This document shows positions 1 through 61,932 of a DNA stretch of 64,000 bases, piece after piece. The stretch is from Mytilus edulis (Eukaryota): NCBI RefSeq assembly GCF_963676685.1, contig NC_092349.1, positions 57,474,001 through 57,538,000 on the forward strand. The letters are read 5' to 3'. Position 1 is the first letter of the stretch. Each line of letters starts with the position of its first letter. Both the position numbers and the translations under genes were made by a program. The notes beneath the pieces were generated by a model. The model had not been told where the DNA came from. It ran no database searches and worked only from the letters and a program-made list of their open reading frames with translations.

Positions 1-657
1 ACTATATGATTTGAGATATCCTAATACAACAGGTTAGTAAATAAGTAAGCCATACCCAGTTGTAGTTGTCCTTTCGGTTTAGTGTTCATCTGTCAGAAGT
101 ATTTAAGCTTATAGTGGAAATAGGTATCCATATTAAGTAAGTATAAACTTAAGATCACGAAGACCAGGATTACTTTGATTAGCAACCAGAAGTTGTAAGA
201 ACCAGGTATTTATTGGTTTGGTTTGGTTAGTGTTGTCATTGTGATTGGTGTTTGAGACTGAGTTTGTATATTTGTAGATCTTTGTAGTTCTAGTTCTTGC
301 TACTAGGTATATCTTTTGGGTGTACACATATTGACTTATTGTGATCACACACAGGTATGATAGTGAATGTGTGATTGAAGACACAGATGAATTACTAAGC
401 AGGGGTGAGTAATTAGTTTTATTACTTTGTCATATTAGATTAGTGTTATTTTGTATATGCATACATAGTTAATCAGGCAATTCTTATTTCAGGTTACTGT
501 CATTGCTTTTCACCACTCTAATTCTTATTTTTCGTTAATTGTAGGTACTTAATAACATATTTTGGTATTTATTTTAGCATTAGTTCTCATGACTTTTGAG
601 TACATTACTTTCAGATTATTTTTTCTTACACTGATTTTTTATCAGTTGTCTATTATC

Positions 658-2658: not shown

Positions 2659-5600
2659 TAGACAATGTTCCCTTCAAGCAGCGTCACAGACGAATACCAC
2701 CATCTATGCTAGAAGAAGTACGTAACCATTTGCAACAACTACTATCAGCAGGAGTGATAAGAAGATCCCATTCACCCTGGTCATCGAATGTGGTATTAGT
2801 ACGTAAGAAGGACGGAAAGCTTAGAATGTGTGTAGACTACCGTCAGCTCAACCTAAAGACCATTAAAGATTCATATGCGCTTCCCCGCATTGAAGAGATT
2901 CTGGATTCCTTAGGAGGCAACACATATTTTACAGTGCTAGATATGAAGAGCGGGTACCATCAAGTTGAGATCGAGGAGGAACATAAACAACGCACCGCCT
3001 TCACCGTTGGACCGTTAGGATTTTTCGAATTTAACAGACTTCCATTTGGACTCTCAAACGCACCAGCTACGTACCAAAGACTCATGGAAGAATGCTTAGG
3101 TGATTTACACACACGTATATGTTACATCTACCTAGACGATCTTATTATTTTCTCGAAGTCCATAGATGAACACCTTGAACGCCTAGAAAGAATTTTCCAG
3201 CGACTCCGTGATGTAGGACTCAAGCTATCCCCTAAGAAATGTTCATTCTTACAGAGGAGAGTTAAGTATATCGGACACATTGTTTCTGCTGATGGTGTAG
3301 AGCCAGATCCTGAGAAAGTAGAAAAAGTAGCCAACTGGCCAAGACCAAGGACTCCAGAAGAAGTACGCCAGTTCCTGGGATTTGTTGGCTATTACAGGAA
3401 ATTTATCAGGGATTTTTCGAAGATAGCACGACCATTAACAGACTTGATGCCAACAACTTGTAAGAAGAAGACCCGAGGAAAGAAGAAACCTACAGAACCA
3501 ACATCTTGGCATTGGAACAAAGAACAGAATGAAGCTTTCGAGACATTGAAGTCGCACTTGTCATCACCGCCGATTCTTGGTTTTCCTGACTACAAGAAGC
3601 CTTTCGAAGTGCACACAGATGCATGTCAGACAGGACTTGGAGCCGTTTTATACCAGCAACAGGGAGAACACAAGAGAGTTATAGCCTATGCCAGCCGAGG
3701 TCTCTCAAAGACAGAACGGAATTACCCAGTCCATAAACAGGAATTCCTAGCACTAAAGTGGGCAGTTACAGAGAAGTTTGGAGATTATCTGCAGGGAAAC
3801 AAGTTCACCGTCTACACAGATAATAATCCATTGACATACGTATTGACGTCTGCGAAGCTTGATGCGACAGGTCACAGATGGATTGCTGCTTTAGCTGCCT
3901 TTGATTTTAACATCATATACAGACCAGGCCGTAACAACGCCGACGCTGATGGATTATCAAGATTACCGGCTATTATCAGTCAACAAGATTGCATACAAGA
4001 TGTCCAAGAGCGTATTAAAGATTCAACAAACATATCAACGGAAAGTGTGAAAGCTATTTGTAGTTCGATACAACGACAACCATATGTAGAATGCCTTGCA
4101 GTAACTACAAATGATCTTGCTAGTAAAGTGGATACAGCATCAACCAAAAAGATCGACATCAGAGAAGAGCAACTACGTGATCCAGTGATAAGAACTTGGA
4201 TAAATTATCTATCGCATGGACAGAAACCACGAAAGGAAGATATACCGTCTTCACCTGCGCATAACCAGCTATTCGCCAACTTTGACAAACTGGTTATACA
4301 GAATGGAATCCTTTACCGTAGAACAACTGTTAATGGAGACACAAAAGATCAGCTTGTCTTGCCAAACTCACAGATACCATCTATACTCCGTTCACTTCAC
4401 AACGACATGGGTCATCAAGGTCGTGATAGAACAACATCTTTAGTGAAGGACAGATTTTATTGGCATGGAATGACAAAGGATATAGATGAATATATTCAGA
4501 AATGCCCAAGATGTTTAAAAAGAAAACAGCTACCCAACCAAAGAGCTCCATTGACGAACATCCGAACAACACAACCAATGGAAATAGTTTGTATGGATTT
4601 CCTTACACTAGAACTTTCGAAAGGTGGTTTCCAGCACATCTTGGTAATAACCGACCATTTTACAAGATATGCCCAGGCGATACCGACTAGGAACATGAGT
4701 GCAAGAACAACAGCAGAAGCGTTCTTTAATAACTACGTGGTACACTATGGTCTTCCAGAACGCATACACTCGGACCAAGGAGGAAACTTTGAAAGTCGTT
4801 TGATGAAAGAACTTTGTAGTATAACTGGTGTCAAGAAGTCAAGAACAACACCATACCATCCCATGGGTAATGGCCAATGCGAACGTTTCAATCGCACACT
4901 ATTGAGTATGCTTGGCACATTACAGAATCACCAGAAAGCCGATTGGAAATCATACCTTGGTCCAATTGTTCACGCATATAATAGCACAAAACAGGAAACG
5001 ACAGGATTTTCACCATTTGCTCTGATGTTTGGCAGAGAACCACGCCTGCCTATAGATCTTGCACTAGGAATAGAAACAACGAAAGAACAGAAGACAAATA
5101 CGAAGTATATTGAGAATTTAAAAGAAAGACTGAAAAAATCTTATGAGTTAGCTACGAATTCAGCAAAGATAGCTCAAGGACGTCAGAAGAAACATTATGA
5201 CAACAAAGTGCGTGGAGCCATATTACATCCAGGCGATCGAGTACTTGTAAAGATTCTGAGTTTCGATGGAAAGCACAAGCTATCTGATAAATGGGAGAAT
5301 GACAGCTACGTCATATTAGATCAGCCTAACTCCACTATCCCAGTCTTTACAGTGAGGAAGGAAAGCGGACATGGAAGAAAGAGAACCTTACATAGGAACC
5401 TTCTGTTGCCTATTGGTTCAGTTTCCATCGATGAAGATGAAGAAAAGGAGAAGCCTAGACCTACTCCTGCACCACGATTAAGACCCAGGAAGAATAGAGT
5501 AGATCCACAACCAACGCCAAGTCTTCATGATAGCACTCTGACAAGTTCTGATGAAGAAAGTGATGATTATTTGGTTTATGTGGTTACAGAACCTGACGTT

Positions 5601-6116
5601 GAAGACTTAAGTGCTCCACACAGTGCTATTGATGAGTTAGAAACTCAGGATGATGATGATACCGTTCAGGACGAGGATGATGACGATCAGGAACACGTTG
5701 CTGAACAGCAAGATACTGGAATTGAGGGTGACGACCTTCCATCTGAAGAGAATGATACAGTTTATCCAGTACTTGAACCTGATGAAGTGTCAGAGACCGA
5801 TCAACAAGAAGCTGACATTTCATTATCTGATGATACAGAGGAACCTGGGCAAGACGCCACTGTTGATGAAACAGTAGATAATGTCCCTCAGCCGGACATT
5901 GAAGCACCATGGATAGAACCGAGAAGATCTGTACGTGCCAGAACATCGACAGCTACCACGAAGTATAAGGATTTTATAGTATCCAAGAAGAGTCAGCCAC
6001 AACCTGACTGGAAGAGTAGAGCTGATTATCTGAAGGATATTGCTTCTAGCGGTACTTTCAAAGGCATGGAGGACCAGATTCTAGCAGGCCTTTTGAAGAT
6101 TGCCACTGAGAAGTGA
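2601..6116 (+). CDS. pol: Pol: RT, RNase H, integrase, acidic C-terminal tail
   Basis: Motifs: LDMKSGYHQ, LPFGL, YLDD, TDAC, HHCC (HNDMGH...CPRC) and the integrase core (MDF, SDQG, ERFNRTL). The frame extends upstream of the called ORF as SKGDDDIGHTSAVRHRIDL. Confidence 0.93.
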   Translation, partial: SKGDDDIGHTSAVRHRIDLIDNVPFKQRHRRIPPSMLEEVRNHLQQLLSAGVIRRSHSPWSSNVVLVRKKDGKLRMCVDYRQLNLKTIKDSYALPRIEEILDSLGGNTYFTVLDMKSGYHQVEIEEEHKQRTAFTVGPLGFFEFNRLPFGLSNAPATYQRLMEECLGDLHTRICYIYLDDLIIFSKSIDEHLERLERIFQRLRDVGLKLSPKKCSFLQRRVKYIGHIVSADGVEPDPEKVEKVANWPRPRTPEEVRQFLGFVGYYRKFIRDFSKIARPLTDLMPTTCKKKTRGKKKPTEPTSWHWNKEQNEAFETLKSHLSSPPILGFPDYKKPFEVHTDACQTGLGAVLYQQQGEHKRVIAYASRGLSKTERNYPVHKQEFLALKWAVTEKFGDYLQGNKFTVYTDNNPLTYVLTSAKLDATGHRWIAALAAFDFNIIYRPGRNNADADGLSRLPAIISQQDCIQDVQERIKDSTNISTESVKAICSSIQRQPYVECLAVTTNDLASKVDTASTKKIDIREEQLRDPVIRTWINYLSHGQKPRKEDIPSSPAHNQLFANFDKLVIQNGILYRRTTVNGDTKDQLVLPNSQIPSILRSLHNDMGHQGRDRTTSLVKDRFYWHGMTKDIDEYIQKCPRCLKRKQLPNQRAPLTNIRTTQPMEIVCMDFLTLELSKGGFQHILVITDHFTRYAQAIPTRNMSARTTAEAFFNNYVVHYGLPERIHSDQGGNFESRLMKELCSITGVKKSRTTPYHPMGNGQCERFNRTLLSMLGTLQNHQKADWKSYLGPIVHAYNSTKQETTGFSPFALMFGREPRLPIDLALGIETTKEQKTNTKYIENLKERLKKSYELATNSAKIAQGRQKKHYDNKVRGAILHPGDRVLVKILSFDGKHKLSDKWENDSYVILDQPNSTIPVFTVRKESGHGRKRTLHRNLLLPIGSVSIDEDEEKEKPRPTPAPRLRPRKNRVDPQPTPSLHDSTLTSSDEESDDYLVYVVTEPDVEDLSAPHSAIDELETQDDDDTVQDEDDDDQEHVAEQQDTGIEGDDLPSEENDTVYPVLEPDEVSETDQQEADISLSDDTEEPGQDATVDETVDNVPQPDIEAPWIEPRRSVRARTSTATTKYKDFIVSKKSQPQPDWKSRADYLKDIASSGTFKGMEDQILAGLLKIATEK

Positions 6117-10980: not shown

Positions 10981-12576
10981 TACACCCGGGAAAAAGTATT
11001 GCAACACCAAATATAAAATGAGATTAAAAGCTGATATTTCATTTTTTTTTATTTTCATTTTTATTCATCTGATAGAGTACACCTTTCCTACTTATTGACC
11101 TTAAATCAATTGTTTTCTCCCATGCATTTCCCCATGAACTGTCCGTGCCTGGCCGCCACTTTAAACTTAAAACTTTTAAAAGTTAAGTTTTAGGTACGGG
11201 TCAAAATATATGCTGAATGTTAGCTTGTTTTTGAAAAACTTATCAACAGTTGATGAAATGTGTCCTCCTCAACTTTCTAGTGATGTTAGATGGCAAATAA
11301 ATTGCATGCGAGAAGCTGGAATTTCGTTAAGGCAGATTGACCGACGCGTGGGCCACCACCATTCACCCATCAGCAGAATTGTAAGTAAACATCAAAATAC
11401 CAATTCTGGAAGACCTTCAGTATATTCCGATCGTGAAAACAGAGCTCTAAACCGACTTATTCGAAGAACCCCCTTCATTAACAGTACAGTATTGAAAAGA
11501 GAGTGGTTTCCACATCGTGCAGTCTCCTCAAGAATTTTGAGAAATCGACTCAAAAGGGCAGGATACTGTTCCCGAAGGCCCGTGAAAAGGCCATTGTTAA
11601 CGCCTAGACACAAAGCTGAACGATAACGGTGGTGTCGAGCTCGTCGTCGCTGGAATGTGGTATCTTGGAGAAGAGTGCATTGGTCCGACGAAAGCAGATT
11701 TTTGTTGCATGTCACGGATGGCCGAGTTCGTGTTTGGCGGCAGCCAAATACCGCATATGCCGAAAGAAACATTGTTTAGAGAGTCGCTTTCGGTGGTGGT
11801 TCCGTTATGGTGTCGGAATGTGTGTCGTATGACTGCAAGTTGGACATAAAAACTGTTCGTGTAACCTTAATGGGCAAAGATACCAGCAGAAAATCCTTGA
11901 GGCAAGTTTAGTGCCGCATTTTGACAATCACCCGTTGAGGACAAGACCCATTTTCATGGACGATAATGCACGAACGCGTGCTGTAACAGCGTATCTTCAC
12001 TACGAGTCAGTGGAGACATTGCCCCGACCAGCATGTTGCCCTGATTTAAACCCGATATAGCACATTTGGGACATGATTGGTCGAAAAGTGCAAAAAATTA
12101 CACCTCCTGTGCAAAATCTTGCAGAATTGGACAATGCACTGCAACATGAATGGCAACAGATAACACAACAACAAATACGACGGTTATGTGGTGGTATGAG
12201 AAGGCAACTGAAAACAGTGATCCATGTGAACAGAAGTTATACAAAATATTGATATTTCCGGTTTAAATTGACAAAATTGACCAAAATGGGTGTGTTCGAC
12301 ATCATCTGGAAGTTGTTCGATGGAACTGGAATGCGTAGACCAATAGTTGTAAACAGTTAATTTGTGCTAAAAAAGTTATGTCTTTTTAATAATAATACTT
12401 TGTATAATTAAATTTGATTTTTTCAGTGTTTAACATGTCTATCAGTTTAAAAAGACCCAATTCACCCCCAAAACTATTAACATTTTACCATATTTTAGAA
12501 AAAAAAGGTACACGTAAGGTTTGAAATTTATCTTATCGAAAAAAATCAGGTGTTGCAAAACTTTTTTCCAGGTGTA
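10981..12576 (+). mobile_element. Tc1/mariner DNA transposon, complete termini
   Basis: TIRs tacacccgggaaaaagtattgcaacacc and ggtgttgcaaaacttttttccaggtgta, both flanked by TA. Confidence 0.92.
11258..12252 (+). pseudogene. Tc1 (DD34E-type) transposase pseudogene
   Basis: HTH region, then WSDES, MDDNAR and PDLNPI*HIWD. The catalytic Glu codon is TAG (12058-12060). There is a further stop at about 11624 and frameshifts. Confidence 0.9.
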
Positions 12577-20409: not shown

Positions 20410-21357
20410 ATGGCAACTAAACGCACATTAGACACAAAGAGCACAGAAGAACAAACCACCGGTGAATCAAAAACCAAAAAGGTGAAAATTTCTTTAGACA
20501 GCTCAACAGGGTCATTGACAAAAGAAAACGTCGATAAAAGCGACCAATCTTCCAAGAAAGTAGCTAAACAGAACGAAATACCTTGTAAGAACAAAGAAGA
20601 AAAAGATGACAGAATGGATGACCATACTATGACTGCCATTACCATCAAAATTGGTATGAACGAAACCAGCACTTACAAATATGTTGACACGAAGGATAAG
20701 TTTATTGAAGTCATTAAAGAGCTCCAGGAAATGATAAAAAATAAGCAAATGATAGCTGTTGATTGCGAAGGGGTAGACTTGTCAAGATTTGGATCAGTAA
20801 CACTGATTAACATTGGCACTCGGGATCTGGTCTATCTAATCGATATTTTGAAAATAGGGAATAGTGTATTTGATGATGGTCTCCGTACTATACTCGAGGA
20901 CAGTGGGATAGAAAAACTGATGTTCGACTGCCGAGAAGATGCCGATGCTTTATTACATCTTCACAAAGTTAAACTCGATGGAGTACTGGACGTTCAAATA
21001 CTAGAAGTAAGCAATCGAGTACATGTTTACAGAAATGGATATACTAAGATCAGAAGCCTTAAACATTGCCTAGAGGAATACGTAAATGACAATACATTAT
21101 TGAATATCAAGTTACAAGGACGGTCAAGTATGAATATGTCGAGTAATATTTGGGAGAAAAGGCCACTGGACGAAAACATGTTGAAATATGCTAGTGTTGA
21201 TATTCTTGGTCTCTTCAAACTCTATAATGCACTTCGTACTAGAATGAGTCATAGTGTCTGGAAAGCAGCCTCAAGTCGATATTGTGACACAACTCGCTCA
21301 AGAAACAGAATGTACCGTGATGGCAGTGGAATCTTACCAAAAGGCGTAATAATATAA
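20410..21357 (+). CDS. DEDDy 3'-5' exonuclease, EXD1/Egalitarian-like; CDS in a single exon (315 aa)
   Basis: ExoI IAVDCEG, ExoII MFDCREDADAL, ExoIII YASVD. Polypyrimidine acceptor ttttcttttttttag ends at 20389, just before acaATGG. Lys-rich N-terminus. Confidence 0.85.
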   Translation: MATKRTLDTKSTEEQTTGESKTKKVKISLDSSTGSLTKENVDKSDQSSKKVAKQNEIPCKNKEEKDDRMDDHTMTAITIKIGMNETSTYKYVDTKDKFIEVIKELQEMIKNKQMIAVDCEGVDLSRFGSVTLINIGTRDLVYLIDILKIGNSVFDDGLRTILEDSGIEKLMFDCREDADALLHLHKVKLDGVLDVQILEVSNRVHVYRNGYTKIRSLKHCLEEYVNDNTLLNIKLQGRSSMNMSSNIWEKRPLDENMLKYASVDILGLFKLYNALRTRMSHSVWKAASSRYCDTTRSRNRMYRDGSGILPKGVII

Positions 21358-22699: not shown

Positions 22700-25310
22700 A
22701 TTATATTAAGGCACTGGGGTATTAATCGTTTAATCAACTGAACCCATTTTTATTGAAGCCGCTGGACTAGTTGTTAGTGAAGCCAGTCACTGGGCACGTC
22801 GTAATATAATCAACTTGGCTGACAGTTATTTAAACCGCTGGACATGTTGTTCTTGAGACGCCACTGGGCGTGTTTTTATTGACACCTCTTGGCGTGTTAT
22901 TGACGCCACTGAGCGTGTTGTTATTGACGCCACTGGGCTTGTTGTTAATGACGCCACTGGGCGTGTTATTATTGACGCCTCTTGGCGTGTTACTTGACAC
23001 CACTGGGCGTGTTGTTATTGACGCCCCTGGGCAAGTTATTATTAAAGCCACTGGGTGTGTTGTTATTGACACCACTGGGCGAGTTGTTATTGACGCCACT
23101 GGGCGTGTTGTTTTTGACGCCACGGGGTGTGATGTTATTGACGCCACTGGACAGGTTGTTATTGACACCACATGGCAGGTAATTATTGATGCAACTGGGC
23201 GTGTGGTTATTAAAGCCACTGGGCAGGTTGACATTGAAGCCACTGGTCAGGTTGACATTGAAGCCACTGGGCAAGATGCTGTTAAAGCCACTGGGCATGT
23301 TGTTATTGACGCCTCTTGGCGTGTTATTGACGCCACTGGGCGTGTTGTTATTGACGCCACTGGTCGTGTATTTATTGACGCCTCTTGGCGTGTTATTGGC
23401 GCCACTAGGCGTGTTTTTATTGACACCTCTTGGTGTGTTATTGACGCCACTGGGCGTATTGTTTTTGACGCCACCGGGCGTGTTTTTATTGACGCCACTG
23501 GGCGTGTTGTTATTGACGCCACTGGGCAGGTTGTTATTGACGTCAATGGGCGTGTTGTTATTATAACCACTGGGCAGATTGACATCCAAGCCACTTGGCA
23601 AGATGCTGTTGAAGCCACTGGGCATGTTGTAATTCAATTCATGGGCTAGAAGTTATCTAAGCCATTAGACAGGTTGTTATTAATGCACGTTGTATGTTGT
23701 TATAGACGCCACTGGGCAAATTGGTATTGAAGCCACTGGGCAGGTTGTTTGTTAAACCACTTGGCAAGTTGTTGTTGAAGACACTTGGCTGGTTATTGTT
23801 GAACCCACTGGACTGGTTGTTATTGATGCCGATGGACAGGTTGTTGTTGACGCAGCTGGGCGTGTTGTTATTGAAGACAATTAGACAAGTTGTTATAAAA
23901 ACCACAAGCCTGATTTTTAATTAAGCCACTGGGCATGTTGTTATTGACTCCACTGGGCATGTTTTTATTGACACAACTGGCAAAATTATTGTTAAAGCCG
24001 AGGGAAATGATGCGGTTGAAGTCACAGGGCATGTCGTAATTAGAGCCATGTGCTAATATTATTTAAACCACTCGGCAATTATTATTGACGCCACTGGGTA
24101 GGTTGTTATAGACGCCACTGGGCGGATTTGTATTGAAGCCGCTGGAAAGGTTGTTTGTAAAGCCAGTGGGCAGTCTATTGGTGAAGACACCTGGCTTGTT
24201 CTTATTGACACCCATGGACAGGTCGTTGTGAAGCCATCGGGCGTGTTGTTATTGAAGAAACTGGGCAATTTGTAATTAAAGCCAATGGACTGATAGTTAA
24301 TTAAGCCACTGGACATGTTATTATGACGCAACCGGACATATTATTAGTAATACATATGTGCATGATATTACTGAAGCCACTGGGCATTTAGTTATAAAAG
24401 ATATAAGTTGGTAGTTATATTAAGCCACTGGGCAGGTTGGTAATGATGCCACTGGGCAGGTTGTTTGTAAAGCCAATGGGCCGGTAGTTTTTGAAGACAC
24501 TGAGCAGTTTCTTATTGACATCAGGGGGCAGCAAGTTGTTAAAGACACTTGACTGGTTGTTTTTGAAGCCACTCAGCGTTCAGTAATTGAAGCTACTAGG
24601 CTGATAGTTACAGTTATTTAAGCCACTCGGCATGTTGTTATTGACGCCATTGGCCAGGTTGTTATTGAAAATACTGGACTTGTAGTTGTTGAAGACTCTT
24701 GGGCAGTTGTTGTTGAAGACACTTGGCTTGGTGTTGAGGACATTGGGTTGGTAGATGTTGAAGACACTGGGCCTGGTGTTGAGGACATTGGGTTGATAGA
24801 TGTTGAAGACACTTGCAGTGAGTTGGCTGGTTGTTGTTGAAGCCACTGGGCAGGTTGTTATTACAAACACTTGGCTGGTAGTTATTCAAGACACTGGGCA
24901 TGTTGATGTTGAAAACACTGGGTAGGTTGTTATTACAAACACTTGGTTGGTAGTTATTCAAGACACTGGGCATGTTGATGTTGAAATTACAAGGTAGGTT
25001 GTTGTTGAAGACACTTGGCAGGTTTGTTGTTGAAACTTGGCTGGTTGTTTTTGAAGACACTGGATCAGTTTTTGTATACGCCACTGGAGATGTTGTTAAA
25101 GACACTGAGGTGGTTGTCGTTGAACACACTGGGCAAGTTTTAATTAAAGGCACTTGACTGGTTGTTGTTGAAGACGCTGGGTATGTTGTTATTGAAGACA
25201 CTGGGCTGGTTGTTGTTTAAAAAACACTGGACAGGTTGTTATTACAGACACTGAGTTGGTTGTTGTTGCAGACACTGGGCAGGTGGCTGTTGATGAAGCA
25301 ACTAGGCTAT
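22700..25310. repeat. Degenerate 24-bp (variant 21-bp) minisatellite, consensus gacgccactgggcgtgttgttatt
   Basis: The unit is directly visible and explains the overlapping repetitive ORFs on both strands. It is most homogeneous at 22850-23630. Confidence 0.9.
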
Positions 25311-41482: not shown

Positions 41483-43621
41483 GGAAGATACCAGGACCTT
41501 GTTGATAAATATATCAACTTCACAAATAAAACATAATGGTCTGGAAGTATAAATTCTAGGTACTGACGTTGTTTTTCATCTTACTTACGTGTTATAGTGT
41601 TCTTTTATTTTTCTTTGTAACTTATTAACCTTTACTGTTTAGTCCATTTTTGGTAAAAGACTTTTGGCGTAGCTCCGTACTTATACATCCCGCCACTTGT
41701 GTTATTGAGCTTTTGTCATTCTTTGTATTCCCGTCTTTCAATTTTGGTAATGTGGTTTGTCTGTTTGCCATTCTGTTTTTCTTTGTTGACATATTTGTTT
41801 GTTTTTATAGGGATTAAGATTATAACACAACGTTGACTACTTTACCCCTATTTTTGACATTTTTACCCATTAAGTCTGTTTGTTTTGTTCACACATTGTT
41901 GCCAATAACATGGAATTGTATGCGACTGTCATACAAGTGAGAGGTTTAGATAGCTATAAAGAGGGTTTTATCCACCATTTTCTACACTGGGCGTTTATCT
42001 AATTTATTTATTGTGTACATGTATTGTTACTCTTAAATATCCAGCCCTCGTGGGAAAAATCGTTGACATATATTCAGACGTTTTATATATATATATGGTA
42101 TGATGTATACACTCGTTCAAAAGTGAAAACACGGTAAAACCTCTGAAAATTGTTAAATGTTTTACATTTTTGTAAAGATTGTTACCGACGTTTCAATAAA
42201 GACCTAAGTCTGCACATTTGTTAACAACATGAAACAAAACAGGTTGGATTTTATAAATGACAAGTGCATTCAATACTTTATTAGATTTCAGTTTGATTAT
42301 ATGATGTTCGGTGCTGTCTTAATGATGTTCGTCCTGCATTCCTTTATAATAAACAACGAAACAAGTAGAATTCACTAGCTTTTAAAATATTTCCAACTAC
42401 AAACGCATGCATTGTTCATTATAAGGTAATTGGCGTAATCTTTCAGAAATAAATCCTTTTAAACTTTTTTTTTAACAAACATTAAATGTTGTTGTTTTTT
42501 TTTTTATATAATATTCAATAATGTTAAGGCATGATATAACATACATACATTAATACAAATTTCGGCACACCTCAACACATTTAAATATGTTACTATACTA
42601 ACTGATAACTATAGACTTAAAAACATTTTTTTTAAATAGTTTCGCATATGACAGTGTAGCCAGCAGATATTAAATTTATTCAAAATGTATTGTAACGAAT
42701 GGCCGAGTTTTAAAGTTTTGAGCTTCACATATGTTACTAGTCTGCCAACTTCTTGGGAAGGTGCGTTCTATTCCGATCTTAATTGGTTATGAATTAGGCA
42801 GCTAGTTTCCCACCGACGACTGGTAATTCTCTGCTGGTAATCGCGTTCCTTCACAAATAAAAACTGATCGCTATGATAAAGCCATGTGCGTTAATGACGT
42901 TAACCACCAACAATCAATTTATCCCGGTTGTAACGTTTTTAAAAGGCTTTGTTTCCAGTCAAGATATATCTTATATATATATATACATGTATATATTTTT
43001 CAACTGTTTAGGCTTGAGCGTTCCCGACGAAGATAAATCCAGAAAAGCGCTTTGCACACACGAAATTTATAAGGTATTATTTTCATTTATAGGGTGTACT
43101 AGCGTGCAATAAGGCTGCTGAATTCAAGAAATAATCACTACTAGGTTGGCTGCTATTAAATGTTCGATTTCTCGTTACGTCACTCTCATGTTTGTTATGA
43201 CTTATATGTTATCAACACTGAACGTGACGTATGAATCGGATGTTACTTATAACGCATAATGACGTACATTTATGTTCCAATTATGCTGAACTGCTTACCC
43301 TTCAAGACCATACTGTGCTTTTAATGAGGTTGAAGTTATTTATCTTGACTTAAATTGTGTTTTAGCGGCTGTTAATTGTCTTTCTGTGTTGTTGTCTTTT
43401 AGATTCGTGAATTTTGAAAAAAGGCAACCTAAAACATAATTATATTAATGAATCAATCAATTAATTTTGACCGCCTCTTTTGTAATTTCATACTATTTCT
43501 ACGTAAATATACCATCATTGAATATATTCTAAAACAGTCCATTTCGTGTGAAAGAAAGAATTTTACTTGACAAATTGTGTATCCATGAATACAAAGACGC
43601 TAATCAGATTAACACCTTGAG

Positions 43622-44882: not shown

Positions 44883-46039
44883 GTTAGTTTTATTACGAAA
44901 CAATTTACTTAAGCAGAATGATTTCGTCGTGCAAATAGCCAAAATATGATATATGCAATTCGTTTTCTGTATTTTTTGCGTTTATAAGTAAAGGCAACAT
45001 TAGTGTATCGATGTTAAAATCTCTGAGAGATCAAGAAAATACAAAGTAACAGGCAAAAACCGAGAGAATAAGTTAGTTGATTATGTTGTACAAGGATGAT
45101 TATTTAGTACAAATAAGGTGGTTTCCTCAAAAGAAGCAACATGAGATAGAAAAGCATACTCTATTCCTTATTACAAATTGGTGCCCTCAAGGAAAAACGT
45201 AGAAATAAAAAAAAAATATTTTAAGACGACAATTTTATATATTAAATAGTGCTTGGTATTATATTACTATAAGTTGTCATATCTTGTAAAGTATATATTG
45301 ATGTAAGACTTTAAAATTGGGGTTGTTAAGTATATTTACAACTTTTGTGGACTTATCTGGACATATCATTTAGACGCATGTGAAAGGTTGAGTGATCATC
45401 TCTTTACTTTTGAGTGTTCTATAGGTTTGTGTCGTTGGATTAATGTCGTTTTGACATTTAACTCAAACACCGGTTTATTCAACAAGACAACGTTTGGTGA
45501 TGTAACATGTATATTTCATCGACATACTATAAATGTATTGCGAACCCATTTTGGTCAATTGTTTGGGATTGATATATGCTTCAGTCACTTAAACCTTTAT
45601 TACAAATGGCTAGAAAGCGTGTTTTTTTCTGTAAAAATAATATGCATTATAACCATTAAGCGGTATTATGGATGTATAAACATGTATGCATATAGAATTC
45701 GTTATGCTGTATCTGAACATTTGCAACAGTTCTTAGCAATAACATATTATTTTGAAAAAAAGAAATATTAAGAAAGGGATACAGGAAATTGCAATTTAAA
45801 GTGAAAATAAACAATAATCATGTGCATGAAGGCATAAATATAGTATTTTATTTAAAGCTTAATTGCTGGAAAACATTTGCTTAATGTAATTTAGATGACT
45901 TAACATGTTAATATATAAGACCTTTCCAATGAAAGTAGAATTTGATTTGATCTTTTTCATCAAGTTGTCTTTTTGTTTTAGTAAACGTACTGTTTTATAT
46001 ATAAATCCAAAATGCTACAATGATGCAGAGTCTGCTACT

Positions 46040-46195
46040 TGAATAGGAGCTTGGACAAATACTCTTTTACTTGTATACGAGCTTGAACATATACTCCTTA
46101 ACTTGTTTACGAGCTTGAACATATACTTGTTTACTTGTAAAAGAGCTTAAACGCATACTCTTTAACTTGTATACGAGCTTGAACATATACTCTTT
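46040..46195. repeat. Intronic ~31-bp minisatellite, about five copies
   Basis: (tac)gagcttgaacatatactc(c/t)ttaacttgt unit. Confidence 0.8.
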
Positions 46196-46341
46196 AATAA
46201 CACGTTTTACAAACAGCTACATAAACTAAACTACATATTAACAAGCACAACACATGCATTATTTGTTTCTACAGAACAAGCTACCTTAATGGCATTTCAA
46301 CACTTAATTGTATTTTTTTCTATTGCAGAAAACTAGTGACA

Positions 46342-49300
46342 ATGAAGGCTGTAGTAATATTTAGCTGTCTGTTCATGACAGTATGTGGTAAGAAAATTGT
46401 GTTAATACTTATACAAAAATATAATACACAAAGTCTTTAGAAACATTCCACAGACCAATTACACTGTTAATTTACAATATGTTTATTTACATTCGAAAAA
46501 GTTTAAAGGTAATGTTTTTGTCTTGTCAATGACTTAAAATAAATGGATAAAACCAATCAATCAAAGTAGAAAAAAAATCGACGAAATACAATTTCATGGA
46601 CCCAAACATTTGTTTCGATCTTAAATTCCAAATGTTTCCCTTTTGATCGATTATATTTGTACTGTTTGTGCAAACAATTCGTTGTCACAATACTTGTTTG
46701 AAGCAGTGTTCAATCAAAGATAAGCGAATCTAAACAATGCTAAAGTTTTGTAAGTGTCTAACAGCGAAGACCTTAATGGTTTTGTTTTTCGGCCAAACTT
46801 GACATGAAACAATAACTCTTTATCCGTTTGAGACCAACATTGCTGTACATTGGCAATCATGCCACATCTTTTTATATTCATATAATTAAATTGTGATTAT
46901 TTTTTTTATTAAATTCATTTTGACCCATTTACATTTTGAACTATGTCAATTTGAGTTAAAACAAATTGTAACAATTGTTTGAGCTATATACTAAAGCATG
47001 TATTCAATTGATTTTCTTTATAGATCAACATTTAGGATTATTAGGTTACTAAATCTTAACTAACGTGAGCAATCCCAATACCTAAAACTGGGTGCTCTTC
47101 AGTGGGTTTTTATATGTGTTTAAATGACGAAAACTAAATACTCTTACACAAACTCCATTTAACTTTCACTTTGTTCTACCTCTCTCAAAAATGAATACCA
47201 AATTGCATCTTTTCTGTAACATTTTCAGGAATGGGTATTCAAAAGAGAAATGCAGATCTTGGAGACATACATGGTGACAATGATGATTTCGCCATTGATT
47301 CCCTAATGAATTATCTCAGGTAAAACCAAAGTTGTAGTAGTTTTAGTTCAATGTGTATTAATAATTCATAGTTGATAATTTTTATAGTTTTATATTCCGA
47401 TGCCTATACACTAAAATTTATAAATCTTGTATATGGCTTAGAAAAATTTCGAGATAAGGTATCTAATTGGCTTATCATAGTCTACTTAGTCTACTAAGGA
47501 CTGATCAATACTAACCCCATAAAAAACGTGGTTAGAATCTATATTTCATTTCTGTCATTTCCGTTATTACAACATTCACTTTAAGTCTATAGTCCATATT
47601 ATAATAAGTACTTACATCTCATATACTCTTGTTGAATTTCATCTATCATCTTTCATCTGTTTCCAACTTCCAATTATGAATCAGTAACATATCATCATTC
47701 CAAGCCTTTGAAGTTATAACATTAAAGTTAATTTTCCTGAAGTTATTTTCATTTTGTACGTTATTCGCCAAATAAAATGGATTGGTTGATCATTACACTA
47801 GATACATTTGAAATAATAGATAAAACCTGAACCGATGTTATGAAAAAAAAATGCCAAAGGGCAATACAAAAATCAATTTTGCAGATTTTGAGTAATTTTA
47901 GGGACACTTTTTAACAAAAATCTAATTTGTGTTGGAAGCATATTAAATGGTGTGTATAAGATAAAAAATAATTCATTTATGTAAATGACTGTCTTTTTTT
48001 TTCTACAAATTTTGAAAATAAAACTTTAAATTTTCAATTATGTCTCAAAAAATATGCACTCTGTTCGTGTTGTAAAGTCAAAATTGTTTGCTTATCAAAA
48101 TTCAATAAACAAATATCAGCACATACCATGATAAATAAATAAAAATCACGAATATTTATGTATTTTACCATATATCATTTGTGATAAATTATTGAAAGTT
48201 GTATTCTGTTATCGTTTATTTTGTTTTTCTATATATCAAGCGCATCAGTAAAAATAATCCATTATTTAAAAAAAATCCAGTAATATCCTGAATCATACTT
48301 ACTATTGTTTTAAGTAAAATCTTGGATCTTAATCTTTGGTAATAGAAATTTAATACAATTCAGATTCCTCCAAGTACAAATCTGGATATCTAATTTTCTA
48401 CTAGTGAATATTGGAATTCCAATTTGTACTAAGAGGATCCTAGATCTTTGTTCTATAACACAAAATGTCATACTTTTCACCCATATTTGTTGTATGTTTT
48501 AAACCTGGACGTATGAGCTTAATTATTTTCTTATTCGTGCCCTCAAACGCAAATAAAGTATATATGAACAAAAACTCAAACACATATCTATGGGAAACAG
48601 CTCGCCTAGACGAGTGCAGCAAAGTTTTATTATCAAATAATTCAACTGTCATCAAATCACATTACCAGCACACTAAGACCGCTGCAGCATACATGTCTTA
48701 CAAACAAATCTACAATGAGAAATAATGAAATAGAATGTTTCATATCACAAAACCATAATTTCATAATGTTCTTTTTAAAATCTGCAGAAAAAGCATAATG
48801 CATTTACAATATTATAAGCTTATACAAAACATGTACACAGGGGGGAAGGGGTGGGGAAAAACTTCACTGCACTAAGACTGAGCTTCGAATGACCAAGCTA
48901 TGAAAATGTATTTTCAATGTCAACGTTTACCGCGAATGACCAGTCCGTGCTATCATACATCGAACTTTAAACTCTTAACTTTGTTAAGGTGACTTATTGT
49001 TATGCTAAAATAATGTAAATATTATTTTAAACATAAACACATGTTCCCAATATAACAACAAACCAATGTGCTATCGATAGTTAATAAATACATATATGTT
49101 GTTTACTTTTTCAATAGGAAAAGATGGAGTATAGGCAGTGGCAACAAAGGAAATGATAATCAAGCAAACAACAACAACGACATTGGTAATTCATATGAAG
49201 AAAATAATAAAAATACACATGTAGCGGGGATAGGAAATATTGGTGACTTTGGAAAGAAACGTGACTCGTCAAATGAGGATAAAAGATGGAGTATAGGAAG

Positions 49301-50519
49301 TGGCAACAAAGGAAATGGTAATCAAGCAAACAACAACAACGACATCGGTAATTCGCATGTAGAAAATAATAAAGATACACATGTAGCGGGGATAGGAAAT
49401 ATCGGAGACTTTGGAAGGAAACGTGACTGGAATATTGGAAGTGGCAATACAGGCAATCATAATTCTGCAAGTGGCAATAGTAACATCGGCAATAGCGAGA
49501 AGAATTATGACAAGAATACAAATGTATATGGCGTTGGAAATATCGGAGACTTTGGAAGAAAACGTGACTGGTCTTTTGAAGGTAAACGATGGAGTATAGG
49601 AAGTGGCAACAAAGGAAATGGTAATCAAGCAAACAACAACAACGACATTGGTAATACGTATGAAGAAAATAATAAAAATACACATGTAGCAGGGATAGGA
49701 AATATTGGAGACTTTGGAAAGAAACGTGACTCGTCAAATGAAGATAAAAGATGGAGTATAGGAAGTGGCAACAAAGGAAATGGTAATCAAGCAAACAACA
49801 ACAAAAACATCGGTAATTCGCGTGTAGAAAATAATAAAGATACACATGTAGCGGGGATAGGAAATTTTGGAGACTTTGGAAAGAAACGTGACTCGTCAAA
49901 TGAAGATAAAAGATGGAGTATAGGAAGTGGCAACAAAGGAAATGGTAATCAAGCAAACAACAACAAAAACATCGGTAATTCGCATGTAGAAAATAATAAA
50001 GATACACATGTAGCGGGGATAGGAAATATTGGCGACTTTGGAAAGAAACGTGACTCGTCAAATGAAGATAAAAGATGGAGTATAGGCAGTGGCAACAAAG
50101 GAAATGGTAATCAAGCAAACAACAACAACGACATCGGTAATTCGTATGAAGAAAATAATAAAAATACACATGTAGCGGGGATAGGAAATATCGGAGACTT
50201 TGGAAGGAAACGTGACTGGAATATTGGAAGTGGCAATACAGGCAATCATAATTCTGCAAGTGGCAATAGTAACATCGGCAATAGCGAGAAGAATTATGAC
50301 AAGAATACAAATGTATATGGCGTCGGAAATATCGGAGACTTTGGAAGAAAACGTGACTGGTCTTTTGAAGGTAAACGATGGAGTATAGGAAGTGGCAACA
50401 AAGGAAATGGTAACACTGCAAATGACAACAGCAACATTGGTAATTCGTATGAAGAAAATAATAAAGATACAAATGTAATAGGAGCTGGAAATTTCGGAAA
50501 CTTTGATGGGAAACGATAA
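46342..50519 (+). CDS. Secreted multi-peptide precursor, 512 aa; join(46342..46387,47229..47319,49118..50519)
   Basis: Exon 1 codes MKAVVIFSCLFMTVCG (g|gtaag, phase 1). Exon 2 codes MGIQKRNADLGDIHGDNDDFAIDSLMNYL (ttttcag| ... ag|gtaaaa, phase 2). Acceptor tttttcaatag| then joins in frame to RKR-WSIGSGN... Total 1539 nt = 513 codons. Confidence 0.88.
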
Positions 50520-60732: not shown

Positions 60733-61886
60733 GTAAGTTTTAATTTGTTTGAAAACAATGCGTTCATCTCGTTTACAGTCTAAATGTAATACAGTAATTT
60801 CTTTCCCATTATTTTTGTAAGTTTATTAGTTGATTTTATAAATTCATATAACAGCAGATAACCTATGTTCAAGTTTCTCCCATCAATTTAAAAGATAAAT
60901 ACCAAAGTAACAAGCACAAACTATGAGAATAAGCCAGTGTATGATTATATCTACGCGCGCTGAATAAGATCAAATTGGTAAAGGGTTTTTTTTTTTGAGA
61001 GAGGCGCAGGGTTGAGGAAACGCATACTTTACTACCATAAGCACAAAGGTGTGTGCTAAGGAAATATCTTTTAAAGTACTGTGCCTGATGTCAATTAAGC
61101 GGTTTTTCGGACGTAAGAGAAATTGCATGGATTTAGAACTCATTACGATAAATCTGAATATTTCTAAGTATTATTCACTGGACATTCAATTACTTGCAGT
61201 TGTCCCTTGGTTTTTGTCTCCCTGACTATTTGTTTCCCGAATATCCGTTTTGTCAAAGAGAAATCTGTTATTTTTATCATTGAGAGGCCTTATATAAATG
61301 TATTGAGATTCTCCTCTTTTGAATTATGTCAGGGATTTTTAATTGTCCTGGTTATGCATATAACTTTGTATTTTGAAATACACTGATTGGGAATAGCTTT
61401 TGGAAAATTGCAACATACAGTAAAAAAAAAACAGTATTGATATAAATAAACGCATACATATATTTTTCTTTTTTCTAAAACTTTCAAAGACCCATTGATG
61501 GCCTTCGGCGGTTGTCTGCTCTATGGTCGAGTTGTTGTCACTTTGACACATTCCCCATTTTGATTCTCAATTTTATTTCAGTTTAGCATTTGTTTAATGT
61601 ATCTTTGATATATAAGGAATCACCCCTCCCCCAGATAGTAAACTTTAATATAAACGTTTTCGTCAAGTGATATTACTGTTCTTGTAATCGTACTGTTTTA
61701 TATAAATTTCTTTTATAATGCAATGGTTCAAAGACTGCTACTTTGAAGCAAACTCGAAAATATACTCTTTTATAAAACTTTTATAAACTAAATATCAACA
61801 AACATAAAAATATATTGTTGTGGTCTAGAGTTATAAGCTATCTTAATGTTGGGTATTACTATTTCTATTTTAGAAAACAGTTGATA

Positions 61887-61932
61887 ATGAGGGATGAAGT
61901 AATATTTAGCTGTTTGCTTCTGACAGTCTGTG
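61887..61932 (+). CDS. Signal-peptide exon of the paralog (MRDEVIFSCLLLTVCG); later exons not found in the window
   Basis: Acceptor tttag| ends at 61873. The 46-nt coding length and phase-1 donor (g|gtatgg) match 46342-46387. Flanking intron sequence is also similar. Confidence 0.75.

What the first reader, a model, noticed from the sequence alone, without database searches (positions are those of the whole stretch)
46342..50519. Spliced secreted polyprotein predicted to release nine amidated 42-43-aa Asn/Gly-rich peptides
Seen in sequence: three coding exons splice in frame to give signal peptide + IQKR + acidic propeptide + RKR + nine repeats. Six repeats are type A (WSIGSGNKGNGNQANNNNDIGNSYEENNKNTHVAGIGNIGDF, 42 aa, with variants). 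Two are identical type B (DWNIGSGNTGNHNSASGNSNIGNSEKNYDKNTNVYGVGNIGDF, 43 aa). The last ends GNFGNFD-GKR-stop. Every unit ends G-K/R-K-R or GKR. Established: dibasic sites are prohormone convertase/furin substrates and a preceding Gly is the PAM amide donor. Inference: this is neuropeptide-style processing applied to long, Cys-free, low-complexity peptides unlike mollusc neuropeptides or mussel AMPs I recognise. It is a candidate undescribed secreted peptide system.
Basis: partly seen in the sequence, partly recalled or inferred. Interest (0 to 1): 0.9.

Follow-up and report, generated by a model that had tools for sequence, protein, structure and literature searches.

The report
Mussel-only multi-copy secreted peptide precursor gene
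This is a real three-exon mussel (Mytilus) gene whose secreted product is built to be cut into nine long asparagine/glycine-rich peptides with amidated ends; the family is found only in Mytilus, has not been studied, and its tissue and function are still unknown.

Summary
Exons 46342-46387, 47229-47319 and 49118-50519 (+) have GT-AG introns and join in frame to give 512 codons. They encode a signal peptide, IQKR, an acidic propeptide, RKR and nine 42-43 aa Asn/Gly-rich units. Every unit ends in Gly plus KKR, RKR or KR. No dibasic pair lies inside a unit, and 20 of 21 Arg residues sit in cleavage motifs.

Database models from M. galloprovincialis and M. trossulus show the same architecture with 5 to at least 7 units. 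All 32 units keep the Gly-basic end.

Every search returned Mytilus proteins only. Pfam, PDB sequences and the ESM Atlas gave nothing. AlphaFold found no fold (pLDDT 36 and 50). Two tandem paralogues lie downstream. One paralogue type appears as a spliced ORF on a 1.65-kb assembled contig.

The peptides are hydrophilic and mostly acidic, so they are unlike classical cationic antimicrobial peptides. They match no mollusc neuropeptide family.

My best reading is a prohormone-style polyprotein that gives a fast-evolving extracellular peptide family. Processing, amidation, tissue and function are inferred. The same stretch was noted elsewhere in this scan.

The parts
46342..46387 (+). Coding exon 1: MKAVVIFSCLFMTVC plus the first base of a Gly codon. 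This is the hydrophobic signal peptide. An acceptor-like site (TTTCTATTGCAG) lies 13 nt upstream of the ATG, so a non-coding 5' exon probably exists further upstream.
   Evidence: The first 15 residues are identical in P0005 and P0002. The same ATG context is present in paralogues 2 and 3.
46388..47228 (+). Intron 1 (GT...AG, phase 1).
   Evidence: the exon join matches the database orthologue proteins.
47229..47319 (+). Coding exon 2: (G)MGIQKR plus the acidic propeptide NADLGDIHGDNDDFAIDSLMNYL and the first two bases of the Arg codon of RKR.
   Evidence: The only genomic relatives are this exon and the exon 2 of paralogue 3.
47320..49117 (+). Intron 2 (GT...AG, phase 2).
49118..50519 (+). 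Coding exon 3: (R)KR, then nine units with spacers, then stop TAA (50517-50519). It contains no Cys, Met, Pro or Leu; Asn is 23% and Gly 18%.
49125..49262 (+). Unit 1 (type A, 42 aa plus GKKR).
49263..49286 (+). Spacer DSSNED-KR. Identical spacers lie at 49728-49751, 49890-49913 and 50052-50075.
49287..49424 (+). Unit 2 (type A plus GRKR).
49425..49565 (+). Unit 3 (type B, 43 aa plus GRKR).
49566..49589 (+). Spacer DWSFE-G-KR, a possible amidated pentapeptide. A second copy lies at 50355-50378.
   Evidence: the orthologues have DWSYE-G-KR at the same place.
49590..49727 (+). Unit 4 (type A plus GKKR).
49752..49889 (+). Unit 5 (type A variant ending GNFGDF, plus GKKR).
49914..50051 (+). Unit 6 (type A plus GKKR).
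50076..50213 (+). Unit 7 (type A plus GRKR). Together with unit 8 and its spacer it is a 303-nt recent duplicate of 49287-49589, with 5 mismatches.
50214..50354 (+). Unit 8 (type B, amino-acid sequence identical to unit 3).
50379..50516 (+). Unit 9 (terminal variant ending GNFGNFD-GKR). It matches the M. galloprovincialis orthologue at 43 of 43 residues and the two M. trossulus models at 42-43 of 43.
61887..61932 (+). Exon 1 of tandem paralogue 2 (MRDEVIFSCLLLTVC, 46 nt, the same length and phase). Its exon 2 (about 65540) and exon 3 (67506-67985) lie beyond the window end, on G000:C6.

Best explanation
The locus is a real Mytilus-restricted gene for a secretory polyprotein. After the signal peptide is removed, subtilisin-like proprotein convertases would cut at the 16 KR, KKR or RKR motifs. 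A carboxypeptidase would trim the basic residues. Peptidylglycine alpha-amidating monooxygenase would then use the exposed Gly. The products would be nine 42-43 aa hydrophilic, mostly acidic Asn/Gly-rich peptides with amidated C-termini (...GNIGDF-NH2 seven times, ...GNFGDF-NH2 once, ...GNFGNFD-NH2 once). There would also be four DSSNED spacers, two possible DWSFE-NH2 peptides and an acidic propeptide. The gene belongs to a small, fast-changing tandem family of three genes plus one inverted fragment within about 46 kb. Unit number differs between species and alleles. I read the products as extracellular effector or signal peptides, more likely from a non-neural secretory tissue than classical neuropeptides. 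Shown here: gene structure, architecture, conservation and taxonomic restriction. Inferred: cleavage, amidation, tissue and biological role.
For: Canonical splice sites and reading frame. The same exon join appears in independent protein models from M. trossulus and M. galloprovincialis. All 32 units in five gene-1 sequences end in Gly plus 2-3 basic residues, and every unit is preceded by KR, RKR or KK. No dibasic pair lies inside a unit, and 20 of 21 Arg residues sit in cleavage motifs. Short acidic spacers are flanked by sites on both sides. Between orthologues the mature units are better conserved than the propeptide: terminal unit 42-43 of 43 and type B unit 40-42 of 43, against 17-20 of 23 for the propeptide. 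Between paralogues the units share 46-58% identity, while the propeptides of genes 1 and 3 look more alike (18 of 23 by my own count). This is the usual pattern of secreted-peptide precursor families. Unit pN/pS is 0.45. AlphaFold gives no confident fold for the polyprotein (pLDDT 36) or for a unit (pLDDT 50), as expected for a flexible precursor and not a folded repeat domain. A paralogue-2-type ORF spanning all three exons sits on a 1652-nt assembled contig, although these exons lie several kb apart in the genome, so it looks like a spliced transcript. Copper monooxygenase domains of the family that includes PHM are present in the genome. Gly plus a dibasic site is already read as an amidation signal in non-neural Mytilus peptides (PMC12294457). 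Restriction to Mytilus and copy-number variation (5, 6, at least 7, and 9 units) fit a fast-evolving effector family better than a conserved neuropeptide (PMC6425005).
Against: The paralogues often lack the Gly-basic end. Gene 3 units end G-W-KR, and gene 2 units 2 and 3 are joined by ...EQKS-DW... with no basic pair. The conserved element of the family is therefore the unit core, which could also act uncleaved. The peptides are acidic and hydrophilic (pI 4.3-5.3 for seven of nine; GRAVY about -1.1 to -1.3), so they are unlike membrane-active antimicrobial peptides, and no activity can be proposed from sequence. The G-R/K-K-R sites lack Arg at P4, so they are not optimal furin sites, and cleavage may need a regulated-pathway convertase whose presence in the expressing cell is unknown. 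The pN/pS pairs are not independent, because the units evolve in concert.
Confidence: 0.55

Rival explanations
1. It is a true neuropeptide or peptide-hormone precursor. It would be expressed in ganglia or neurosecretory cells, and its amidated peptides would act on a receptor.
For: The architecture is that of a textbook multi-copy neuropeptide precursor: signal peptide, acidic spacers, Gly plus di- or tribasic sites, and Arg confined to cleavage motifs. The mature units are strongly conserved between orthologues.
Against: The family is restricted to one genus, whereas mollusc neuropeptide families are broadly conserved with few lineage-specific additions (PMC6425005). Forty-two residue, Cys-free, low-complexity peptides in nine copies are unusual for neuropeptides. 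Unit number varies between species and alleles. The paralogues lose the amidation signal. No match was found to any known family.
Confidence: 0.15
2. It is a structural or matrix protein, such as a shell-matrix, byssal or mucus component, that works as an intact or only partly cut low-complexity repeat protein. The basic motifs would be part of the repeat and not processing sites.
For: It has a repetitive low-complexity sequence, is lineage-restricted, sits in a tandem cluster and varies in copy number, all of which are typical of mollusc matrix proteins. Asn/Gly-rich acidic sequence recalls the NG repeats that gave the automatic name 'N66 matrix protein-like'. In paralogue 2 two units stay joined without a basic pair. 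A weak beta tendency appears in the low-confidence model.
Against: The strict Gly-basic end in all 32 units, spacers flanked by sites on both sides and Arg used almost only in those motifs have no obvious role in a matrix protein. The sequence has almost no Tyr/DOPA-type composition, no Cys and no recognisable domain. There is no confident fold. The carbonic-anhydrase domain of N66/nacrein is absent.
Confidence: 0.17
3. It is the precursor of reproductive or other waterborne signal peptides, such as egg-derived sperm attractants or pheromones. The comparison is with the multi-copy precursors of echinoderm sperm-activating peptides, which I recall from my own knowledge and did not test here.
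For: It has many copies of a long hydrophilic peptide, evolves fast, is restricted to one genus and has diverging paralogues. These features are expected for gamete-recognition or species-specific cues.
Against: There are no expression data and no sequence similarity to any such peptide. The comparison is purely by analogy.
Confidence: 0.08
4. It is not a working gene. It would be an untranscribed or decaying repeat array whose open frame and motifs persist through recent duplication.
For: Paralogue 3 in this assembly has a stop and frame breaks. An antisense ORF of 453 aa is also open, so open frames here owe something to composition.
Against: The ORF is intact with the same architecture in three species. 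The terminal unit matches at 42-43 of 43 residues across species. pN/pS is below 1 and lowest in the sense frame. Splice sites and phases are conserved in all paralogues. A spliced paralogue contig exists. The antisense ORF has no Pfam match, was not itself run through the protein-database searches, and has a higher pN/pS of 0.72.
Confidence: 0.05

Closest known systems
Molluscan multi-copy amidated neuropeptide precursors (for example FMRFamide, Mytilus inhibitory peptide, LFRFamide and PRQFVamide precursors; PMC6425005)
   Same: Both have a signal peptide, many tandem peptide copies, Gly plus KR/KKR/RKR processing and amidation signals, and acidic spacers.
   Different: Those peptides are 4-15 aa long, conserved across molluscs or lophotrochozoans, and neuronal. 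Here the units are 42-43 aa long, Asn/Gly-rich and found only in Mytilus, with no sequence match. The tissue is unknown.
Myticalins, the Cys-free gill antimicrobial peptides of Mytilus (PMC12294457)
   Same: Both are Mytilus-restricted, secreted, linear and Cys-free. In both a Gly before a dibasic site is read as an amidation signal. Both are highly variable between individuals or species and are non-neural users of prohormone-type processing.
   Different: By my recollection, not checked in the paper here, myticalin precursors carry one cationic peptide followed by an anionic extension. Here there are nine copies of an acidic or neutral, very hydrophilic peptide. The prepro region has no relatives outside this family.
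Multi-peptide immune precursors such as honeybee apidaecin and Drosophila Baramicin (my own knowledge, not tested here)
   Same: One precursor is cut at basic sites into several copies of a secreted peptide, with copy-number variation and fast evolution.
   Different: There is no homology. Those products are Pro/Arg-rich or otherwise cationic, and immune induction has been shown for them. Nothing is known of induction here.
Multi-copy precursors of echinoderm sperm-activating peptides (speract, asterosap; my own knowledge, not tested here)
   Same: They carry about ten tandem copies of a peptide with spacers. Asterosap is long, at about 34 aa. They are species-specific extracellular signals.
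   Different: They come from a different phylum, have no sequence similarity, and asterosap has a disulfide bond. There is no evidence of gonad expression here.
N66/nacrein shell matrix proteins, the automatic RefSeq name of the M. trossulus orthologue
   Same: Both contain Asn/Gly-rich low-complexity sequence.
   Different: N66/nacrein is defined by a carbonic-anhydrase domain interrupted by NG repeats, and no such domain is present here. The name, like 'myb-like protein D', 'dyrk1' and 'gnt13' for the paralogues, is most likely an artefact of the Asn-rich composition.

Membership tests
Prohormone-type multi-copy amidated peptide precursor (architecture class) | N-terminal signal peptide | tested here: met
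   MKAVVIFSCLFMTVCG has a short charged start, a 12-residue hydrophobic core and V-C-G at positions -3 to -1. This was read from the sequence; no SignalP-type tool was available.
Prohormone-type multi-copy amidated peptide precursor (architecture class) | Repeated peptide units each flanked by di- or tribasic cleavage motifs, with none inside the units | tested here: met
   This holds for 9 of 9 units here and 32 of 32 in five orthologous sequences. There are no internal dibasic pairs, and 20 of 21 Arg residues lie in the motifs.
Prohormone-type multi-copy amidated peptide precursor (architecture class) | Gly immediately before the basic site, acting as amide donor | tested here: met
   GKKR, GRKR or GKR follows every unit in the gene-1 orthologues. 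It is not conserved in paralogues 2 and 3.
Prohormone-type multi-copy amidated peptide precursor (architecture class) | Mature peptides actually released and amidated | not testable with these tools
   This needs peptidomics.
Prohormone-type multi-copy amidated peptide precursor (architecture class) | Transcribed and spliced as modelled | tested here: inconclusive
Indirect support comes from identical joins in the RefSeq and ENA protein models and from a spliced paralogue ORF on a 1652-nt contig.
Known molluscan neuropeptide families | Sequence homology to a described family, and presence across molluscs | tested here: not met
   Only Mytilus proteins were hit among 1.84 billion representatives and 5.8 billion clusters. 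There was no Pfam match.
Myticalins | Single cationic Cys-free mature peptide, anionic C-terminal extension and the family prepro sequence | tested here: not met
   Here there are nine copies and the peptides are mostly acidic. The prepro region matches only this family.
N66/nacrein | Alpha-carbonic-anhydrase domain with an NG-repeat insert | tested here: not met
   No Pfam domain reaches its curated cut-off in exon 3, and exons 1 and 2 encode only the signal peptide and propeptide.
Beta-solenoid or folded repeat protein | Confidently predicted regular fold spanning the units | tested here: not met
   AlphaFold2 gave a mean pLDDT of 36 for the 466-aa exon-3 product and 50 for one unit with an 18-unit alignment. 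This does not exclude assembly into amyloid-like fibres, which such models do not address.

The most novel reading that the evidence does not exclude
Mytilus has evolved its own class of long (42-43 aa), amidated, Asn/Gly-rich, Cys-free peptides. They would be released in nine copies per precursor by neuroendocrine-type processing in a non-neural tissue. They would act outside the animal or at its surfaces in a way not yet described for mollusc peptides, for example as species-specific gamete or settlement cues, as mineral- or ice-interacting peptides, or as self-assembling units of a secreted gel. The paralogues would explore other C-termini, including the cationic GRKLGWILGKKLG-type inserts seen in the M. 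trossulus paralogue.
Probability: 0.3. Interest if true: 0.75.

Novelty: new variant of a known kind. Interest (0 to 1): 0.55.

Why it matters
Mussels are major aquaculture and ecological model animals, and their secreted peptides and proteins (antimicrobial peptides, byssal adhesives, shell matrix) have repeatedly produced new biochemistry. This family is absent from the literature. In the databases it carries only misleading automatic names. If the peptides are released as predicted, they would be among the longest multi-copy amidated peptides known from a mollusc. They would also show a new peptide family arising and diversifying within a single genus. The prediction is directly testable, because the mature masses and C-terminal amides are exactly specified by the sequence.

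Tried and rejected
No cross-species dN/dS or junction check was therefore possible.

Exons were translated and searched separately by reference, and natural full-length orthologue proteins from the database stood in for the joined product.

3. Pfam on exon 3 gave only sub-threshold noise (tRNA_SAD, NIPSNAP, SUD-C). PDB sequences gave nothing. The ESM Atlas gave no usable hit.

4. Literature searches for peptide motifs, accessions, 'N66 matrix protein-like', 'asparagine-rich' and 'Asn-rich' with Mytilus found nothing on this family.

5. Beta-solenoid reading: AlphaFold gave no confident structure. It is neither supported nor excluded for assemblies.

6. Antisense 453-aa ORF (49111-50472, minus strand): it has no Pfam match, a higher pN/pS of 0.72 against 0.45, and no signal peptide or splice context that I could see. 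I rejected it as a by-product of composition.

7. Classical cationic antimicrobial peptide: rejected on charge and hydropathy.

8. Search with the prepro region for other mature domains sharing it, on the conotoxin/dermaseptin logic: only this family was found.

Full report
**Observation**

Exon 1 (46342-46387) begins with ATG and is followed by GTAAGA. Exon 2 (47229-47319) follows a pyrimidine tract ending in CAG and is followed by GTAAAA. Exon 3 (49118-50519) follows ...TTCAATAG and ends in TAA. The lengths 46+91+1402 nt add up to a multiple of three, giving 512 codons.

- Exon 1 encodes MKAVVIFSCLFMTVC(G), a typical signal peptide.
- Exon 2 encodes MGIQKR and the acidic propeptide NADLGDIHGDNDDFAIDSLMNYL.
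- Exon 3 starts (R)KR and holds nine long units: six type A (42 aa), two identical type B (43 aa) and one terminal variant.

Each unit ends in Gly followed by KKR, RKR or KR. DSSNED-KR occurs four times and DWSFE-G-KR twice, and the latter could give an amidated pentapeptide. TRF sees the 162-nt period. Units 2-3 plus spacer and units 7-8 plus spacer form a 303-nt recent internal duplication with 5 mismatches.

Exons were handled separately by reference, and natural full-length orthologues served for whole-protein comparisons.

**Is it more than low complexity?**

Yes.

- No dibasic pair occurs inside any unit, and 20 of the 21 Arg residues in exon 3 sit in the cleavage motifs.
- Across 18 units from the three paralogous genes of this genome, nine positions are invariant: W1, G4, S5, G9, N12, N17, N22, K29 and T31. 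The unit is therefore a defined motif and not random Asn/Gly sequence.
- Summed pN/pS among the type A units is 0.45 in the sense frame, the lowest of the six frames. A 453-aa ORF is also open on the opposite strand, and its frame gives 0.72. That ORF has no Pfam match.

**Relatives**

The window is G000:C6:57474001-57538000 of a 1.37-Gb Mytilus genome. Three searches returned only Mytilus proteins from M. galloprovincialis, M. trossulus, M. californianus and M. edulis:

- a word-indexed search of 5.8 billion clusters;
- a full phmmer pass over 1.84 billion representatives;
- a profile search with the family alignment.

The orthologues are XP_063396024.1 and XP_063416922.1 (M. trossulus, 303 aa, 5 units), XP_076107395.1 (M. 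galloprovincialis, 357 aa, 6 units) and VDI43208.1 (M. galloprovincialis, 426 aa, at least 7 units). All 32 units in the five sequences end in Gly plus basic residues.

The database names are most likely artefacts of the Asn-rich composition. They include 'N66 matrix protein-like', 'myb-like protein D', 'dyrk1', 'gnt13' and 'skp1 ... GlcNAc transferase-like'. No Pfam domain reaches its curated cut-off in the exon-3 product here, so the carbonic-anhydrase domain that defines N66 is absent. PDB sequences and the ESM Atlas gave nothing. No paper in the library contains the peptide motifs or the accessions.

**Gene family and neighbourhood**

Downstream on the same strand lie two paralogues with the same exon lengths and phases.

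- Gene 2: exon 1 at window 61887-61932, exon 2 at about 65540, exon 3 at 67506-67985. It has three degenerate units.
- Gene 3: exon 1 at about 83834, exon 2 at 85054-85137, exon 3 at 85594-87458. It has many DWNLGSG... units ending G-W-KR. In this assembly one stop and two frame shifts interrupt it.

An inverted partial copy of exon 1 and intron 1 lies at about 92221-91673.

A Logan-assembled contig of 1652 nt carries a complete gene-2-type ORF spanning all three exons (P0013). These exons are separated by introns of several kb in the genome, so this is most simply a spliced transcript. It is indirect evidence that the family is expressed with this splicing pattern.

The rest of the window holds no functionally linked gene. 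It contains an LTR retrotransposon (gag, protease, RT, RNase H, integrase), a Tc1-type transposase fragment and a 3'-5' exonuclease ORF.

**Pattern of conservation**

Between orthologues the mature units are better conserved than the propeptide. The terminal unit matches at 42-43 of 43 residues and the type B unit at 40-42 of 43, against 17-20 of 23 for the propeptide.

Between paralogues the reverse holds. The propeptides of genes 1 and 3 match at 18 of 23 by my count, while their units are 46-58% identical. A conserved prepro region with diverging mature peptides is the usual signature of secreted-peptide precursor families.

The Gly-basic end is not a family-wide feature. Gene 3 units end in Trp-Lys-Arg, and two gene 2 units are joined without a basic pair. 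The conserved element of the family is the unit core. Amidation belongs to the gene-1 lineage.

**Structure and chemistry**

AlphaFold2 gave no confident fold for the exon-3 product (mean pLDDT 36, with a 10-sequence alignment). It also gave none for a single unit (pLDDT 50, no secondary structure, 18-unit alignment).

The predicted peptides are very hydrophilic, with GRAVY between -1.06 and -1.27. They are 26-29% Asn and 17-19% Gly. Seven of the nine are acidic, with pI 4.3-5.3. Exon 3 encodes no Cys, Met, Pro or Leu. This argues against a classical cationic, membrane-active antimicrobial peptide.

**Mechanism**

The most economical reading is prohormone-type processing:

1. the signal peptide is removed;
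2. a convertase cleaves at the KR, KKR and RKR motifs;
3. a carboxypeptidase trims the basic residues;
4. the exposed Gly directs amidation.

This would release nine long amidated peptides and the spacers. The steps follow from established knowledge of proprotein convertases, carboxypeptidase E/D and PAM. Copper monooxygenase domains of the family that includes PHM are present in this genome. None of the steps is shown for this protein.

This processing logic is not confined to neurons in Mytilus. In the gill-specific, Cys-free myticalins a Gly before the dibasic site is likewise read as an amidation signal (PMC12294457). Mollusc neuropeptide families are broadly conserved, with few lineage-specific additions (PMC6425005). 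This family is restricted to one genus, is tandemly duplicated and varies in unit number. I therefore favour a fast-evolving extracellular effector or signal family from a non-neural secretory tissue (0.55 for the processed-polyprotein reading as a whole). The alternatives are:

- a true neuropeptide (0.15);
- a structural matrix protein that stays largely intact (0.17);
- a gamete or pheromone signal (0.08);
- a non-functional array (0.05).

**What could not be done**

Junction reads, tissue expression, orthologue DNA and cross-species dN/dS are therefore missing, and they are the decisive next steps together with peptidomics.

**Novelty and score**

The gene models already exist in public databases, but they are uncharacterised and misnamed, and I found no literature. 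The processing architecture is a known kind. What is new is its use on long, low-complexity, Asn/Gly-rich peptides in a genus-restricted family with no detectable relatives. I rate it a new variant of a known kind, with interest 0.55. The same stretch was also noted elsewhere in this scan (s1-839798, s1-839888).

Noticed in passing
window 49566-49589 and 50355-50378: The spacer DWSFE-G-KR (DWSYE-G-KR in M. galloprovincialis and M. trossulus) has its own Gly-KR end and a basic site upstream. It could therefore give a conserved amidated pentapeptide, DWSFE-NH2, besides the long peptides.
   Followed up: partly
window 46316-46341; also 61861-61886 and about 83808-83833 on G000:C6 (window numbering): A strong acceptor-like site (pyrimidine tract plus CAG or TAG) lies 13 nt upstream of the ATG in genes 1, 2 and 3. 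This suggests a non-coding 5' exon further upstream. Blocks at 43069-43510 resemble sequence 0.3-0.9 kb upstream of gene 3.
   Followed up: partly
window 61887-61932 and beyond the window end (G000:C6:57539531-57541985): Tandem paralogue 2 has three degenerate units, a Cys-containing basic spacer (ILKICKK) and a basic tail. It is intact in M. californianus, M. trossulus and M. edulis models. M. californianus 'isoform X2' (XP_052074918.1) joins a gene-1-type head to a gene-2-type exon 3, which hints at alternative or read-through use of the 3' exons.
   Followed up: partly
G000:C6:57557834-57561458 (loci L008, L002-L005): Paralogue 3 has a long array of DWNLGSG... units ending G-W-KR, with no amide donor. 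A roughly 565-nt higher-order repeat carries the same frame break twice, and there is one TAA. It is either a pseudogene or contains homopolymer errors in the assembly.
   Followed up: partly
protein P0003 (M. trossulus XP_063448025.1): In this paralogue the junction GRKR-DWNLG has been multiplied and changed into cationic, amphipathic-looking GRKLGWILGKKLGWILG inserts between the units. This sequence type is very different from the acidic units.
   Followed up: no
window 49111-50472, minus strand: A 453-aa antisense ORF rich in Cys, Tyr, Leu, His and Phe runs through the repeat exon. It has no Pfam match and a higher pN/pS than the sense frame, so it is most likely a by-product of composition.
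   Followed up: yes
window 46037-46197: A 32-bp tandem repeat of 5 copies at 81% match lies about 150 nt upstream of coding exon 1.
   Followed up: no
window 562-6116: Two long ORFs of an LTR retrotransposon carry PNMA/gag, aspartyl protease, RT, RNase H and integrase domains. They appear intact.
   Followed up: partly
window 20410-21357: An intronless 315-aa ORF has a 3'-5' exonuclease domain (PF01612, E 7e-22).
   Followed up: partly
window 11210-11626: A Tc1/mariner-type transposase N-terminal fragment (HTH_Tnp_Tc3_2).
   Followed up: no
window 22830-25201: A minisatellite region is open in several frames on both strands.
   Followed up: no
G000:C6 about 57566013-57565673, minus strand (window numbering 92221-91673): An inverted partial copy of exon 1 (MKAIITFSCLFMAVCG) and intron 1 of the family, reaching the start of an exon 2-like sequence. 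No repeat exon was found next to it.
   Followed up: partly
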